Virus record (IMG/VR): IMGVR_UViG_3300030019_000003
Coordinates: 186,001 to 250,000 of that record
DNA: 64,000 nucleotides
Direction: 5' to 3' (one strand)
This document shows positions 4,305-47,634 of the stretch, piece by piece. A program made the translations under genes and the position numbers. The notes beneath the pieces are model-generated. The model made no database searches. It had not been told where the DNA came from and saw nothing but the letters and a program-made list of their open reading frames with translations. Position 1 is the stretch's first letter. Every line of letters begins with the position of its first letter.

Positions 4305-4875
4305 TAACCCAGATGTTCTTTACAGTATAGAGGATATGTACAGCCCTAAGAAAGCTAAAAAAGAGATGTTGGTTATACCTGCGGATATGCTACTTGAATT
4401 ACTTCCTGAGAAGTTCCTGCCATTATGCACTACTGCATACGCAGTTTTAACTTCAGATGAAAAGAATATGATACAAGCTGGTTTACTGGAAGGTCTTATA
4501 CGATTTATCACTACCTTTGGTTATGACGATTTATCAGTATGCCGAGTTAACCAACAATTTGTAAATACCTTTATTTCTATTTACTCTTATATTACAGAGA
4601 TACACTTTATAACGTATAATATTCTTGATATATCCTTAACAGAGAGTCAGGTGTACGAATATGTTTTCTTATTGAGACAAGCTGTTAATGATTTGCTACA
4701 TAATAATAACGTTGGATATAAAGATCTATCCGCAGCTGAGGATCCATCTGAGTTTAACATGTGCATGAAGTATTATGTTTATCTTGATGCTGATATTTCG
4801 TTAATAACAGATAACCATAAGAAGCAACCTTATTGTAACCTGTTTATAAAAAGGGTTACCTGTGCGCGAAATTAA
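4288..4875 (+). CDS. Hypothetical protein
   Basis: GTG start with GGAGG upstream; coupled to neighbours. Confidence 0.7.
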   Translation: MSEYLNNPDVLYSIEDMYSPKKAKKEMLVIPADMLLELLPEKFLPLCTTAYAVLTSDEKNMIQAGLLEGLIRFITTFGYDDLSVCRVNQQFVNTFISIYSYITEIHFITYNILDISLTESQVYEYVFLLRQAVNDLLHNNNVGYKDLSAAEDPSEFNMCMKYYVYLDADISLITDNHKKQPYCNLFIKRVTCARN

Positions 4876-5302
4876 AACAACCGTTATTGAAATTAACCTA
4901 ACAAGGCTTATGGGTCTAACTGGCAATATGATCCAAGACAGTCCAATAGAGTTGGAACTTATACCCTTATATAAGTATAGACATACAGAGGATAGCAACA
5001 CGTACACATTGTTCACAAACATCGTATTAGAAAAGTTATATGGCTCTGTTAAAAACTATACCCTAAGTGATATATACACGTTCATACCTAAAAAACGTTA
5101 TGAACATTGTTTCTTAAACTTTGTTCATACGTTGGAGATATTTATACTTAATAAGATACGACCTAATCCACTGGATATTGTGTTTCTTAAGTATAAAGTA
5201 TTTACTAAAGAAAGTATCATTGCTATCTTTAGAGTTGATTTTCTTAAGGAGAATTATAATGACGCTTTACCCATCGCTACTGACTCAGTATGTGCCGGAT
5301 AA
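4862..5302 (+). CDS. Hypothetical protein
   Basis: GTG start overlapping the upstream ORF end. Confidence 0.65.
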   Translation: MREIKTTVIEINLTRLMGLTGNMIQDSPIELELIPLYKYRHTEDSNTYTLFTNIVLEKLYGSVKNYTLSDIYTFIPKKRYEHCFLNFVHTLEIFILNKIRPNPLDIVFLKYKVFTKESIIAIFRVDFLKENYNDALPIATDSVCAG

Positions 5303-43472: not shown

Positions 43473-45332
43473 ATGAATGGTAACAACAATGGAGCAGGGT
43501 TAACGTTTGATGAAAATGAGGGTACTGGAAATCCAGCAGTAGGTCAAAATGAGAATTTGCAGCAACCTAATGGATACGCGCCTTATCAAAATGAGGGTTC
43601 AACCACGTATGATAATGGATTCAATTTGTTTCAAAGTGGCTTCTTATCAACACAACCTGGCTCAGAACTTACTGCGAAATACTCTAAAGGTATTTTAGAG
43701 TTTATCGAAAAAATTAAAAGAACCGGTTTTAAAGTTAGCGAACTTGACAACGCTACGATTACAAATTTAAAATACAGTTCTATCATCATCTCTGCGGTCA
43801 ATGGACCAGAAGTACTTTATTACACATTGCTTATTGCCGCTACAGGTAAAGCTTCTCATAATGTTAAAGATTACTTCAATGTTCTTTCTGATGCAGAACG
43901 TATGAGTCTTAAAGATGCAGATGAAGCAGTGCGCTCATTGTACTTACCTTATATCGCATTTGATAATGACTATAAAGCAGCGATCGAAGCAAAACTTGAT
44001 GAAACTTATGGTACAAAATACAAATACGTTTCTCTTGATGGTTTCATCATTCATGAAGATGTTGTTGACAGTGAAGATCTATATCGTCATATGTTTGCAA
44101 AAGCGTTTAATGCGTTCCATGCTGAAACAAAAATGAGTGATGGTGTTGGCGATGCTACTATTGAAAACATTGCAAGATCTGCAAACTATCGTATCGCAAG
44201 TAACGGATGTAGAAACAGCGTTTCAGCATTGACTCCATTTGGTGCTGCTGTTAGAACTGACTGGCAGTTATCTTTGATTCCACAACCTCGTAAACAATCT
44301 TCTAACAGTATTCACACTGAAGGTGCTGTTGGACCTATCTTAACAGTTGGTGGTTTTGTAGATGCTATCCCTGAACAAACAATGATCCAAGAAGGCTTTG
44401 GTCAAATTGCAGGTATCCGTTATCACCCACATATTATCGTAACAAATGTTGCAAGTGCGTATGAAACAACGGGTATGGCTCTTCTTGCTATTACTGTTGG
44501 TGTAAGTATGGTTAAACCTGAAATGTATCTTGCGTCATTATCGCCAAGAGCTAAAAACAATCCAGGCGCATTGAATGTATTTGCTAACCTTGCTAACAAT
44601 CCAAATGGTGGTGAGTTCTTAGATATGACAACTGCAGCGTATACTCCTGATGCTATCATGGATTCATTGTCTAAAATGTTTACATTGGCTCCAGTGTTCT
44701 CTATTGATATTGAAACTTTTGGTCCTGATGCTTATACACTTTCTGCATTCACAAGTCTTACTAAAGAGAACCCAACAACATTCGCAGGTGCTGCAGCTTA
44801 CTTGGTTAACGTTGCGTCTAAACTTACAAAAGGCATGTTTCCTACTGAATATGACCTTAACAAAGTTATTGCTGGATTTACACGTGTCCCAACAGGTTCA
44901 TATATTGATCATGGTTCTAATGTACCATCTGATATTCGTGACTTTGATATGATCCGTGTTGTTAATGAGTCTGTTAACAATCCTAAATTGATTTACAAAT
45001 GGTACAACTCTAACACTAACCCAAATGGTTACAATGAAAAAGTTGAAGTTCTTGCAGCTATTAATCCAGGTGCTAAGATCACTGGTGAAGCAAGACGTGT
45101 TACGTTACATCCTGAGTTTATTGCAACACTTGTTAACGCAGTTTCTGCAAATAACCTTAGACCAAGTGCTACTCCTGAGGTTGAACTACAAACAACAAAT
45201 GGTTTCGTAGGTGGTGGTTTCTTTGCTACTGCTGGTGTTACCAATGTTGGTTTTGGTAACTTTGGTGGATTTGGTACAAATAGACCTGTAGGCTTTGGTA
45301 ACAACCAAGCTACATTTAGTAATCGTTTCTAA
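43473..45332 (+). CDS. chmA: Chimallin, phage nuclear shell protein (phiKZ gp54 / 201phi2-1 gp105-like)
   Basis: 619 aa; collinear motifs FGAAVRTD, PHIIVTNV, NPGALN, PVFSIDIETFG, SDIRDFD and TGEARRVTLHPEFI; lies upstream of the nvRNAP beta' gene. Confidence 0.9.
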   Translation: MNGNNNGAGLTFDENEGTGNPAVGQNENLQQPNGYAPYQNEGSTTYDNGFNLFQSGFLSTQPGSELTAKYSKGILEFIEKIKRTGFKVSELDNATITNLKYSSIIISAVNGPEVLYYTLLIAATGKASHNVKDYFNVLSDAERMSLKDADEAVRSLYLPYIAFDNDYKAAIEAKLDETYGTKYKYVSLDGFIIHEDVVDSEDLYRHMFAKAFNAFHAETKMSDGVGDATIENIARSANYRIASNGCRNSVSALTPFGAAVRTDWQLSLIPQPRKQSSNSIHTEGAVGPILTVGGFVDAIPEQTMIQEGFGQIAGIRYHPHIIVTNVASAYETTGMALLAITVGVSMVKPEMYLASLSPRAKNNPGALNVFANLANNPNGGEFLDMTTAAYTPDAIMDSLSKMFTLAPVFSIDIETFGPDAYTLSAFTSLTKENPTTFAGAAAYLVNVASKLTKGMFPTEYDLNKVIAGFTRVPTGSYIDHGSNVPSDIRDFDMIRVVNESVNNPKLIYKWYNSNTNPNGYNEKVEVLAAINPGAKITGEARRVTLHPEFIATLVNAVSANNLRPSATPEVELQTTNGFVGGGFFATAGVTNVGFGNFGGFGTNRPVGFGNNQATFSNRF

Positions 45333-45399: not shown

Positions 45400-45606
45400 A
45401 TGGCCTACACACCATATGTAAAAGTAACTACAGAAGATATTAAGGAAATGATAGCCTCAGGACAAATCACACCAGGCTCAACGGTGTGCGATAGCTGTCA
45501 TGGTACTGGCGAGTGTCCTATTGATATTTACGACGAAGATGATAAAAGAAATGATGATCTTTATGAAGAGTGCAAAGTATGCGGTGGTAATGGACATGTA
45601 TGTTAA
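45400..45606 (+). CDS. Small DnaJ-type zinc-finger protein
   Basis: CDSCHGTG and CKVCGGNG (CxxCxGxG twice); GGAG RBS. Confidence 0.7.
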   Translation: MAYTPYVKVTTEDIKEMIASGQITPGSTVCDSCHGTGECPIDIYDEDDKRNDDLYEECKVCGGNGHVC

Positions 45607-45641: not shown

Positions 45642-46916
45642 ATGGCTATAACACAAACGCTTATACCTATAGATCAACTCTATCAACGTACAGGTGCCAA
45701 GATCATATTGAATAAGCTAAATGCCTTCAGTATGACTGATCAAGAAACCTTGTCTAAAAGTATCATGACTGTTTATGATAATGTTGACGTTATTTCTACG
45801 ATACCGCAATGTGATTGTGGCGCTATTAAAGGTAGGTACCTATTAGGAACACGTTGCCATACCTGCGGTACTGAGTGTAAAGAACTACATGAGAAAGTAG
45901 ATCCTATCCTATGGTTAGAAGCTATGGATAAAGGTTTACGATTCTTAAATCCAGGATTCTGGATGTTGATGTCCGAGATACTAGATTCTAAAAAACTGGT
46001 AGATTGGCTAAGATGGCTATGTGATCCAACCTATAGTAATGAAACACCTGTTCCACCACATATACAAGGAATTTATCTTGACGTCTTAAAAAGTAAACGT
46101 GAGTATAATAATACGATGTTACGCTTAAGAGATATCATGGTTTATATTCTTAATATACCAAGACCAACAGCAAAAGCAGATAGCTTATCTAAAGTATCTA
46201 TTATTAAACTAATAGAACTGTATGATCAGTATACAGCAGATGATATTTTATTCTCAACATATCTTCCGATTGTTAATAAGAAATTGTTTGTTATGGAAAA
46301 TACGGCTAAGGGTAAGTTTGTTAATCTTGTTGTATCTGAGATTCTTGATATCGTACTATCGTGGGTTAAAAGTTCTAATGCATTTGAGATTGATAGGAAT
46401 CTTAAAAAAGCAGGCATCATTACAGCTATGGCAGTATCGGAATTAAGTAAGTTCTTTTCAGAATTTACGGATAAGTATATCTTGAAAAAATCAGGATTGT
46501 TTCGTAAGCATGTATATGGTTCACGAGGTCACTTTACTTTCCGATGTGTTATCGTGTCAATATCAGGTCCGCATGATTATGACGAGATACACATACCTTG
46601 GGCTGTAGGTGTAACTGTTTTACGACCTATGCTTCTTAATAAGCTACGCCAACGCGGTGTAACCTATAAAGCAAGTCATAAGTTGCTTATGCAATCTGTT
46701 AAAAAGTTTGATCCGTTAATAAATGAGTTACTATTAGAGTTACTAGCAGAATCTCCATTAGGAAAACTACCAGTAATATCACAACGTAACCCATCACTAA
46801 CACAATCTAGTGCACTATTAACGTATATTACTAAAGTAAAGACGGATGTTGATGATAAGACTGTAGGTATTAGCAGCCTTGTTTGTAAACTACCTAATGC
46901 TGATTTTGATGGGGAT
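45642..46916 (+). CDS. Non-virion RNA polymerase beta' N-terminal subunit, exon 1 (phiKZ gp55-like)
   Basis: Zn motif CDCG...CHTC, KKSGLFRKHVYGSR, QRNPSL and catalytic NADFDGD; the ORF-track end at 46949 is read-through into the intron. Confidence 0.92.
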
Positions 46917-47400
46917 GAACATTTCGTCCCCCTAGGCATTGCTGCCTAGTAAAAAACCTCTCTAATTGCGGGAACCGACTTAAGACTATAGCTACTACTC
47001 GTACCTAGAAATAGAGTATGATACTTACGGAGTAATGTTTCCAGTAAGAAAAGTAAAAACGCTATAATATTGCGGAATCGACGCAGCGAAGCTTCTAAGT
47101 CCGATGAGGATATGAAGTAGGCTCAACGACTATCGAAACGACGCACTACAGTGTATGAGATGCCTATAGACGGTGTCGGTATAGGTAACTATACTCAACG
47201 GAGTAGAGTAGGGCCCAAGTGGGTGGGTATAGAATCCCTTAAATCGAAACGAGAGGAATTTGTAATTTTTAATTACAAGTTATGATATAGTCTATGCGAC
47301 TTATAAGTCTTTCCTAGTTTACAAACTAGGTCATCGTGTAAAACACACGAGCCGCATGTAAAGATGCGAGTATATTTAACGAATATGCTAAATATTTTAA
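46917..47400 (+). ncRNA. Group I self-splicing intron (IA-like), no internal ORF
   Basis: P1 with U.G pair (GGGGAU/GUCCCC); P AAUUGCGGGA; Q AAUCGACGCAGC; R CUCAACGACUAU; S GAUAUAGUC; P3 CCUCUC/GAGAGG; P8 hairpin; P10 AUUUC/GAAAU. Confidence 0.92.
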
Positions 47401-47634
47401 GAAATTAATTTTACGTTAATTTTAGATACTTATCTACATGAGTTAGCTAAAACGTTCGCACCACATCACAATGTATTTGATGGTGCTAAACCTTATAGTA
47501 TCAATGGGTTTATTACATTATTAACACCTGCTAATGCTTTGTTATCAGACGCGCTAGATGATGATGAAGAAAGACCACTAGAAGACACTATTTATGACAA
47601 GTTAAAGTTTGTAAAAGTAGGTGTTAATAAATAA
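47401..47634 (+). CDS. nvRNAP beta' exon 2 (77 aa; absent from the ORF track)
   Basis: Reads EINFTLILDTYLHELAKTFAPHHNVF...VGVNK-stop, continuing NADFDGD in frame; the spliced product is 502 aa. Confidence 0.88.
   Translation, partial: EINFTLILDTYLHELAKTFAPHHNVFDGAKPYSINGFITLLTPANALLSDALDDDEERPLEDTIYDKLKFVKVGVNK

What the first reader, a model, noticed from the sequence alone, without database searches (positions are those of the whole stretch)
46917..47400. Group I intron in the nvRNAP active-site motif that appears to end in A instead of omega-G
Seen: the beta' gene is split right after NADFDGD by a 484-nt ORF-less intron with complete P1-P10 elements. The IGS AUUUC-G-UCCCC (46921-46931) pairs with exon 1 GGGGAU through the canonical U.G and with GAAAU at 47401 (P10). 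Only exon 2 starting at 47401 restores the frame (DGD|EINFTL). The last intron base is then A47400 (...TTTTAA). Established: group I introns almost always end in G, and P7 here (GACUAU/AUAGUC) keeps a normal G-binding pair. Inference: either an omega-A splicing variant, or 5' cleavage shifted by one base using G47401. Intron and exon 2 both start GAA, so the mRNA alone cannot distinguish the two. I cannot say whether related jumbo-phage introns have been reported with this trait.
Basis: partly seen in the sequence, partly recalled or inferred. Interest (0 to 1): 0.82.

Follow-up and report, generated by a model that had tools for sequence, protein, structure and literature searches.

The report
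Phage group I intron ending in A
A self-splicing (group I) intron sits inside the catalytic NADFDGD motif of a jumbo phage's RNA polymerase gene, and comparison with eight related introns at the same site indicates that it, and two relatives, end in A rather than the nearly universal G. This is a rare variant that still needs RNA-level proof.

Summary
Rfam finds one group I intron (46907-47317, 56.6 bits). Ungapped homology to 51 uninterrupted relatives fixes the mRNA junction at DGD|EINFTL. Three peat-metagenome assemblies reproduce both intron ends without a difference.

The intron is 46917-47400 and its last base is A47400. The only alternative that gives the same mRNA is 46918-47401.

I recovered both ends of eight more introns of the same family at the same site in related chimallin-encoding phages. 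Six end in G and two (L006, L007) end in A. L006 and L007 begin with A, so the shift-by-one model would put Lys after DGD. Lys is found in none of the 51 relatives.

Four features place the A at the omega position:
- the U·G wobble in P1;
- P10 (5-6 bp, covarying);
- P9.0, in a fixed, covarying register across all nine introns;
- the length of the 3' tail.

The guanosine-binding pair in P7 is unchanged. L006 and L007 keep the same A-ending tail although their endonucleases are only 48% identical.

Best reading: omega-A group I introns (about 0.65). There is one precedent, a Coxiella 23S rRNA intron. No RNA data were available, so splicing and the exact intron ends remain unproven.

The parts
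45642..46916 (+). Exon 1 of the non-virion RNA polymerase beta' N-terminal subunit gene (425 codons, ends NADFDGD)
   Evidence: ORF list. tblastn finds 285 jumbo-phage records at about 30% identity, annotated as RNAP beta/beta' subunits, including PhiPA3 gp54. Pfam PF00623 gives a partial hit at residues 377-425.
46917..47400 (+). Group I intron, 484 nt, without an endonuclease gene; last base is A47400
   Evidence: Rfam RF00028, 56.6 bits. Boundaries come from protein homology and from P1, P10 and P9.0.
46911..46931 (+). P1 hairpin. Exon GGGGAU (46911-46916) pairs with guide sequence GUCCCC (46926-46931), with U46916·G46926 at the 5' splice site. Intron GAA (46917-46919) pairs with UUC (46923-46925) as a P1 extension.
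   Evidence: Sequence, Rfam alignment, pairing script. The wobble G is kept in L006 and L007.
46921..46925 (+). 5' part of the internal guide sequence (AUUUC), the P10 partner of exon 2 GAAAU (47401-47405)
   Evidence: 5 contiguous pairs directly next to P1. It covaries in the orthologues: L007 GAAUUA/UAAUUU and L006 GAGGUU/AAUCUU.
46932..46949 (+). P2 hairpin (CUAGGCA / UGCCUAG, loop UUGC)
   Evidence: Minimum-free-energy fold and Rfam alignment.
46957..46962 (+). P3 5' strand (CCUCUC), pairing with GAGAGG at 47251-47256
   Evidence: Rfam alignment. L006 and L007 have CCUUCC with GGAAGG, a compensatory change.
46966..47122 (+). P4-P5-P6 scaffold domain with an extended P5 arm
   Evidence: Rfam alignment.
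47128..47133 (+). P7 5' strand GACUAU. G47128 pairs with C47292; this is the guanosine-binding pair, equivalent to Tetrahymena G264-C311.
   Evidence: Rfam alignment. The J6/7-P7 sequence is the same (CAACGACUAUCGAAA) in the three A-ending introns and in G-ending L057 and L009, and P7' (AUAUAGUC) in eight of the nine introns; L056 differs by a compensatory change (GACCA with AUGGUC) and the 5' strand was not located reliably in L061. The Tetrahymena equivalence is from established knowledge.
47134..47250 (+). Peripheral insertion between P7 and P3' (the position of P7.1/P7.2, a hallmark of subgroup IA). It contains the family-specific motif GGGUAU..AAUCCCUUAAAUCGAAA.
   Evidence: It appears as an insert in the Rfam alignment. 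The motif recovers 5 viral and 35 metagenome loci.
47260..47278 (+). P8 hairpin. In L006 and L007 the HNH endonuclease gene sits in this loop.
47287..47292 (+). P7 3' strand AUAGUC
47295..47296 (+). J7/9 nucleotides U47295 and G47296, the P9.0 partners of A47399 and U47398
   Evidence: The same register holds in all nine site-matched introns, with covariation.
47298..47388 (+). P9 and four further 3' hairpins (47298-47309, 47313-47330, 47335-47349, 47353-47368, 47370-47388)
   Evidence: Fold. The same architecture is present in L006, L007, L057 and L009, with 106-110 nt from P7' to the intron end.
47389..47400 (+). Single-stranded 3' tail ending in A47400, the omega position
   Evidence: It aligns without gaps to the tails of L056 and L057, which end in omega-G. 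P9.0 register.
47401..47634 (+). Exon 2 (77 codons, EINFTLILD..., plus stop TAA at 47632-47634)
   Evidence: Translation and alignment with uninterrupted homologues.

Best explanation
This is a subgroup-IA-like group I intron, without an endonuclease gene, that interrupts the beta' N-terminal subunit gene of the non-virion RNA polymerase. The host is an uncultivated phage from peat that encodes the phage-nucleus shell protein chimallin. The intron sits exactly between the last Asp codon of NADFDGD and the following Glu codon.

Proposed mechanism:
1. Exogenous guanosine, bound at the normal G47128-C47292 pocket in P7, attacks after U46916 at the U·G wobble of P1 (inferred).
2. The 3' splice site is brought in by P9.0 (U47398-A47399 with U47295-G47296) and by a 5-bp P10 (GAAAU with AUUUC) (pairings shown; function inferred).
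3. Exon 1 is ligated to G47401, releasing an intron whose last nucleotide is A47400 instead of the usual omega-G (inferred).

Two orthologous introns that carry an endonuclease gene (L006, L007) share this trait. Six other introns of the same family at the same site keep omega-G.

What is shown: the fold, the pairings, the junction and their conservation. What is inferred: that splicing occurs, and how A is tolerated in a G-specific pocket. Possible answers to the latter are a slow second step carried by P9.0 and P10, or a protein helper.
For: - Group I fold: Rfam 56.6 bits.
- Junction: ungapped homology to 4 plus 51 uninterrupted relatives.
- DNA sequence: confirmed in three assemblies.
- Orthologues L006 and L007 end ...AAGAGA|GAG and ...AAGAGA|GAA.
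- They begin with A, so a one-base shift would encode Lys, seen in 0 of 51 relatives.
- The U·G wobble is kept in all three A-ending introns, and P10 is 5, 6 and 6 bp with covariation.
- P9.0 in a fixed register pairs in 9 of 9 introns at omega-1 and 8 of 9 at omega-2, with four pair types, only if the A is omega.
- A47400 aligns with the omega-G of L056 and L057. The distance from the conserved UGAA to the intron end is 11 nt in L006 and L007, as in L009, L061, L063 and L064.
- Controls: ten other junctions in the same gene family, defined the same way, are canonical U·G plus omega-G.
- L006 and L007 have diverged (host protein 54% identical, endonuclease 48% identical, both ORFs intact) yet keep the identical A-ending tail.
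- The phage sequence is present in more than 20 peat runs.
- Precedent: Raghavan et al. [quoted passage not shown]
Against: - No RNA evidence. No RNA run was listed, so neither splicing nor the intron ends have been observed.
- The P7 pocket is the standard G-C pair. By established mutational work on Tetrahymena (from my own knowledge), such a pocket discriminates strongly against A at omega.
- For this window the shifted intron 46918-47401 gives the same mRNA.
- Only two evolutionarily independent A-ending lineages are known, because L006 and L007 share their tail. A is the commonest base in these AT-rich tails.
- A strong P10 is not exclusive to the A-ending introns: L064, which ends in G, also has 6 bp.
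Confidence: 0.65

Rival explanations
1. Both splice sites are shifted one base downstream. Cleavage occurs after G46917 rather than after the wobble U, and G47401 serves as a normal omega-G. The intron is then 46918-47401 and the mRNA is unchanged.
For: It keeps omega-G, which matches the unchanged G-C pocket in P7. G46917 pairs with C46925, and AAAU with AUUU still gives a 4-bp P10. A G follows the terminal A in all three A-ending introns.
Against: The 5' splice site would no longer be at the conserved U·G wobble, which is kept in all three. In L006 and L007 this model gives DGD-K, absent from 51 relatives. P9.0 in the family's register drops to 1, 0 and 0 pairs. The tail would be one base longer than in four of the five G-ending introns that carry the UGAA motif.
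Confidence: 0.12
2. Splicing is canonical at the RNA level (U46916 joined after G47401) and mostly yields a frameshifted mRNA (DGDKLILR*). Full-length protein would then come from a minor mis-spliced fraction or from recoding, so the A marks a leaky, down-regulating intron.
For: The next G downstream is the expected fallback when omega-G is lost (established for Tetrahymena mutants; from my own knowledge). The G-site is intact.
Against: The frameshifted products end after 1-8 codons in all three phages and share no conserved reading frame. P10 and P9.0 both point to the junction before G47401. The subunit is expected to be essential.
Confidence: 0.1
3. The intron no longer completes splicing. 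The gene is in effect split, or dead, at DGD.
For: Exon 1 runs into a stop 10 codons into the intron. In L006 and L007 an in-frame ATG or GTG lies 12 nt before exon 2. Jumbo-phage RNA polymerases are already built from split subunits.
Against: The window has no start codon before exon 2, because TAA lies directly upstream in frame. The ribozyme core, P1, P10 and P9.0 are conserved with compensatory changes. The endonuclease ORFs in L006 and L007 are intact. The phage is widespread in peat samples.
Confidence: 0.08
4. It is a sequence artefact: one G was lost from an original ...AAG|GAA during assembly.
For: None beyond the oddity itself.
Against: Contigs from three runs agree base for base at both ends. 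Two independent contigs from other metagenomes (L006, L007) show the same A|G arrangement.
Confidence: 0.02

Closest known systems
Coxiella burnetii 23S rRNA group I intron Cbu.L1917 (Raghavan et al. 2007, J Bacteriol 189:6572)
   Same: It is a natural, self-splicing group I intron reported to lack the canonical omega-G. The paper's title says so. From my memory of the abstract, its terminal base is A and it splices in vitro and in vivo.
   Different: It is a bacterial rRNA intron of another subgroup; a citing paper lists the Coxiella L1917 element as IB2. The present case is in a phage protein-coding gene, is IA-like, occurs in three introns of probably two lineages, and has G-ending sister introns at the identical site. 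I could not read the paper itself, as it is not held.
PhiPA3 gp210 intron in an RNA polymerase subunit gene (Birkholz et al. 2024, PMC11620839)
   Same: It is a putative group I intron carrying an HNH endonuclease, inserted in a chimallivirus RNA polymerase gene directly after conserved catalytic Asp residues. L006 and L007 carry NUMOD4/HNH_3 endonucleases.
   Different: It is in a beta subunit gene of a Pseudomonas phage. The passages I retrieved report no unusual terminal base. The window's intron has no endonuclease gene.
Subgroup IA2 phage introns (T4 td, nrdB and nrdD; Twort; SPO1 DNA polymerase)
   Same: These are phage group I introns in conserved enzyme motifs, with P7.1/P7.2-type insertions and optional endonuclease genes in peripheral loops.
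   Different: To my knowledge all of those end in G. Membership of IA2 specifically was not tested here.
Tetrahymena omega-G (G414) and G-site (G264-C311) mutants (Michel et al. 1989; Price and Cech 1988; from my own knowledge)
   Same: They define what an A at omega should do: impair exon ligation unless the G-site pair changes to A-U.
   Different: Here the natural introns keep the G-C pair, so the classical compensatory solution was not used.

Membership tests
Group I intron (Rfam RF00028) | Covariance-model score at or above the curated gathering score | tested here: met
   56.6 bits against 50, E 1e-11, full model 1-253.
Group I intron (Rfam RF00028) | P1 formed by the end of exon 1 and an internal guide sequence, with a U·G wobble at the 5' splice site | tested here: met
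   GGGGAU with GUCCCC, and U46916·G46926. The wobble is kept in L006 and L007.
Group I intron (Rfam RF00028) | Conserved P3-P8 core, with the guanosine-binding G-C pair in P7 | tested here: met
   P7 is GACUA with UAGUC, including G47128-C47292. The sequence matches the Tetrahymena consensus and the G-ending relatives.
Group I intron (Rfam RF00028) | P10 between the guide sequence and the start of exon 2 | tested here: met
   5 bp in the window and 6 bp in L006 and L007, contiguous with P1 and covarying.
Group I intron (Rfam RF00028) | Last intron nucleotide is G (omega-G). This is nearly universal and is not part of the Rfam model. | tested here: not met
   The homology-defined junction leaves A47400 as the last base. 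The only G-ending register, 46918-47401, is disfavoured by the orthologues and by P9.0.
Group I intron (Rfam RF00028) | Guanosine-dependent two-step self-splicing | not testable with these tools
   No RNA run was listed. An in vitro assay is needed.
Subgroup IA (phage-type) group I introns | Extra helices P7.1/P7.2 between P7 and P3' | tested here: inconclusive
   A 117-nt structured insertion lies at that position (47134-47250). The helices were not modelled or compared with IA reference structures.
Natural omega-A group I introns (Coxiella Cbu.L1917 type) | The terminal intron base is A, shown by the exon junction | tested here: met
   The junction is inferred from protein homology, P10, P9.0 and tail alignment in three introns. 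This is comparative, not experimental.
Natural omega-A group I introns (Coxiella Cbu.L1917 type) | Demonstrated accurate splicing with the A-ending intron released | not testable with these tools
   No transcript data are available.
Mobile (homing) group I introns | An intron-encoded homing endonuclease | tested here: not met
   No ORF longer than 44 codons lies in 46917-47400. Orthologues L006 and L007 carry NUMOD4 + HNH_3 ORFs in P8, so the window's copy is an endonuclease-less relative.

The most novel reading that the evidence does not exclude
A lineage of phage group I introns has given up the omega-G, probably twice independently at one insertion site. The window's intron groups with G-ending L056, while L006 and L007 form their own pair. 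These introns would still ligate exons accurately with an A at omega in an unaltered G-specific pocket, with 3' splice-site choice carried by P9.0 and P10. They would be the first such cases in a virus and in a protein-coding gene. G-ending sister introns at the identical site would serve as natural controls for how the second step of group I splicing tolerates loss of omega-G.
Probability: 0.55. Interest if true: 0.65.

Novelty: new variant of a known kind. Interest (0 to 1): 0.55.

Why it matters
Omega-G is one of the most conserved features of group I introns and is central to the accepted two-step mechanism. As far as I know, natural exceptions are limited to one bacterial rRNA intron.

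This set offers a natural experiment on what positions the 3' splice site when the omega nucleotide cannot use the G pocket. It has three A-ending and six G-ending introns of one family, at one site, with identical P7 pockets.

There are two practical consequences:
- Gene callers truncate this essential polymerase subunit at the catalytic motif in over half of the relatives (69 of 120).
- Annotation rules that demand a terminal G would place the exon boundary wrongly.

Tried and rejected
- RNA evidence: the search for RNA runs listed none. The single read-laying run could therefore only check DNA contigs. It showed no intron-less allele.
- Near-identical DNA in the GenBank phage collection: none. 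tblastn with exon 2 alone also found nothing.
- Alternative in-frame 3' site after G47415: rejected. It would delete EINFT, which is ungapped in all homologues, and it has no P10.
- For L006 and L007, a G four bases upstream would give DGD-R-E...: rejected. No relative has an insertion there, P10 would be poor, and the window cannot do the same because of the in-frame TAA.
- An automated solver for splice junctions of the roughly 30 paralogous introns (P1 + P10 + open frame) was too noisy in this AT-rich DNA. I did not use it, so the terminal bases of paralogues in other genes remain unsurveyed.
- The idea that a strong P10 compensates specifically for loss of omega-G was weakened: G-ending L064 also has a 6-bp P10.
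- The contigs read for the most window-like relative (P0029) break 37 nt into the intron, so its 3' end could not be read.
- The Coxiella papers are not held. Only the title could be cited.
- Free-text searches for omega-A or omega-G gave nothing useful.

Full report
**Observation**

The window holds exactly one Rfam group I intron match, at 46907-47317 on the + strand (56.6 bits, gathering score 50, E 1e-11).

- It follows ORF 45642-46916, which ends ...KLPNADFDGD.
- By tblastn this ORF resembles the beta'-like N-terminal subunit of jumbo-phage RNA polymerases in 285 records at about 30% identity, including PhiPA3 gp54.
- The gene upstream (43473-45332) matches the Pfam chimallin family (PF25677, 33.7 bits against a cut-off of 27). 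The host is therefore a nucleus-forming-type jumbo phage.
- The same sequence is IMG/VR contig IMGVR_UViG_3300030019_000003 (252 kb). More than 20 peat-metagenome runs hold it.

**Junction**

Joining 46916 to 47401 gives a 502-aa protein.

- Its sequence around the junction, NADFDGD-EINFTLILD, aligns without a gap to four uninterrupted phage homologues (NADFDGDQLNFT...QLNLT...ALNLA...QMQGM).
- It also aligns to 51 uninterrupted metagenomic relatives.
- An in-frame TAA at 47398-47400 forbids an earlier start for exon 2.
- A later in-frame start after G47415 would delete five aligned residues.
- Joining U46916 to A47402, which is canonical U·G plus G47401 as omega, gives DGDKLILR*.

The mRNA must therefore read GAU|GAAAUU. 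The intron and exon 2 both begin with GAA, so four registers are formally possible.

**DNA check**

Logan contigs from three runs cover both intron ends with no difference, and no intron-less form appeared. No RNA run was listed.

**Relatives**

A search with the exon-1 protein returned 358 relatives. Of the best 120:

- 51 are full length.
- 69 stop within or near NADFDGD.

This marks an intron hot spot with insertions after QRN, after N[A/G], after DFDG and after DGD.

I recovered both ends of eight further introns at the DGD| site:

| Terminal base | Locus | 3' junction |
|---|---|---|
| A | L006 | ...AAGAGA\|GAGGUU |
| A | L007 | ...AAGAGA\|GAAUUA |
| G | L057 | ...GAAACG\|GAA |
| G | L056 | ...AUAAUUG\|GAA |
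| G | L061 | ...AUACUG\|GCA |
| G | L009 | ...CUAUUUG\|GCA |
| G | L063 | ...AUAACG\|CAA |
| G | L064 | ...AGAGUG\|GCU |

All belong to one family. The P7' strand is AUAUAGUC in eight of the nine, and the J6/7-P7 5' strand is the same where it was located, in L006, L007, L057, L009 and the window. L056 has a compensatory variant (GACCA with AUGGUC), and the 5' strand of L061 was not located reliably. The long-tailed members (window, L006, L007, L057, L009) share the same series of 3' hairpins, with 106-110 nt from P7' to the intron end.

Ten junctions in this gene family serve as controls. They are these six plus introns at other sites in L009, L010, L012 and L013. Defined by the same homology method, all are canonical U·G plus omega-G. 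The method therefore does not produce A-endings by itself.

**Which base is omega?**

- L006 and L007 begin with A. The shift-by-one model would there encode Lys after DGD. Among the 51 full-length relatives that residue is E 33, A 10, Q 6, C 1, S 1 and never K.
- The guide-sequence G opposite the last exon-1 U is kept in all three A-ending introns. P10 starts at the G of the Glu codon and is 5, 6 and 6 bp, with different sequences.
- P9.0 has a fixed register in all nine introns. The third nucleotide after P7' pairs with omega-1, and the fourth pairs with omega-2.
  - It pairs at omega-1 in 9 of 9 introns and at omega-2 in 8 of 9.
  - The omega-1 pairs include A-U, G-C, C-G and U-A.
  - With the A as omega, the three A-ending introns give 2, 3 and 3 pairs. 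In the shifted register they give 1, 0 and 0.
- MAFFT aligns A47400 with the omega-G of L056 and L057 without a gap.
- The tail from the conserved UGAA to the intron end is 11 nt in L006 and L007, as in four G-ending relatives.

Together these place the A at the omega position.

**Is it functional?**

L006 and L007 differ substantially. Their host proteins are 54% identical, and their HNH endonucleases are 48% identical with both ORFs intact. Yet they share the identical ten-base A-ending tail. That argues for long maintenance in active elements.

A small tree of core plus tail groups the window's intron with G-ending L056 (support 95/96), and L006 with L007 (89/93). This suggests two independent losses of omega-G. 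The inference is tentative, because the alignment has only 320 columns.

**Mechanism**

The most likely course is ordinary group I chemistry with an A at omega. The first step is at U46916·G46926. The 3' site is then docked by P9.0 and P10, and ligation is to G47401.

How the unchanged G-C pocket tolerates A is unknown. All three A-ending introns have a P10 of at least 5 bp, but so does G-ending L064, so P10 strength is not a clean explanation.

Rival readings are listed separately: the shifted register, mostly unproductive splicing at G47401, no splicing, and artefact.

**Comparison with known cases**

The fold is a bona fide group I intron, and the omega-G feature is not met.

- One natural precedent exists: Coxiella Cbu.L1917. 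[quoted passage not shown] That its terminal base is A is from my memory, because the paper is not held.
- Group I introns with HNH endonucleases at catalytic Asp residues of chimallivirus RNA polymerase genes are already known (PhiPA3 gp210).

I found no report of A-ending introns in phages or in protein-coding genes, but the library is incomplete.

**Verdict**

- The omega-A reading is supported comparatively, at about 0.65.
- It is a new variant of a known kind.
- Interest is moderate until RNA ends are sequenced. That would be most decisive on L006 or L007, where the mRNA alone separates the two models.

Noticed in passing
Relatives P0001-P0120; loci L009, L010, L012, L013: The NADFDGD-coding region of this polymerase subunit is an intron hot spot. 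69 of the 120 closest relatives are truncated there, with insertions after QRN, after N[A/G], after DFDG and after DGD. L009 carries two introns in the gene, and L012 carries three.
   Followed up: partly
L012:4885-4896 and L013:5660-5671: A 12-nt mini-exon (GAUUUYGACGGU, encoding DFDG) lies between two adjacent group I introns. Both introns are canonical (U·G plus omega-G).
   Followed up: partly
window 47208-47252; loci L014-L053: A 45-nt stretch of the intron's P7.1/P7.2 region matches other contigs in the same peat samples with 3 differences. A 23-base motif from it recovers 5 viral and 35 metagenome loci. Most are paralogous introns in other genes, for example an RNAP beta-like gene (L014, L043) and a terminase-like gene (L016, L031).
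   Followed up: partly
L014 (reverse strand, about 1160-1250) and L016 (reverse strand, about 4850-4935): In these paralogues the obvious P1 helix is fully Watson-Crick, with no U·G wobble visible. Their true splice sites were not determined, so other non-canonical junctions may exist in this family.
   Followed up: no
L054, L058, L059 (contigs carrying P0029): The contigs read for the most window-like relative break 37 nt into the intron. This is probably an assembly break at a repeated intron sequence. Its 3' terminal base is therefore unknown.
   Followed up: no
L006:3288-3521 and L007:6092-6325: An in-frame ATG (L006) or GTG (L007) 12 nt before exon 2 makes ORF finders call a separate 77-aa ORF (MNKRE...). 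No ribosome-binding site was evident.
   Followed up: no
window 45400-45606: A small 68-codon ORF with two Cys pairs (CDSCHGTGEC ... CKVCGGNGHVC) lies between the chimallin gene and the polymerase gene. It has no Pfam hit.
   Followed up: no
L057, L061, L062, L063, L064, L008: In these site-matched introns the HNH endonuclease gene lies near the 5' end, between the 5' splice site and the guide sequence. In L006 and L007 it lies in the P8 loop. The same intron family has therefore acquired endonuclease genes at two different positions.
   Followed up: no
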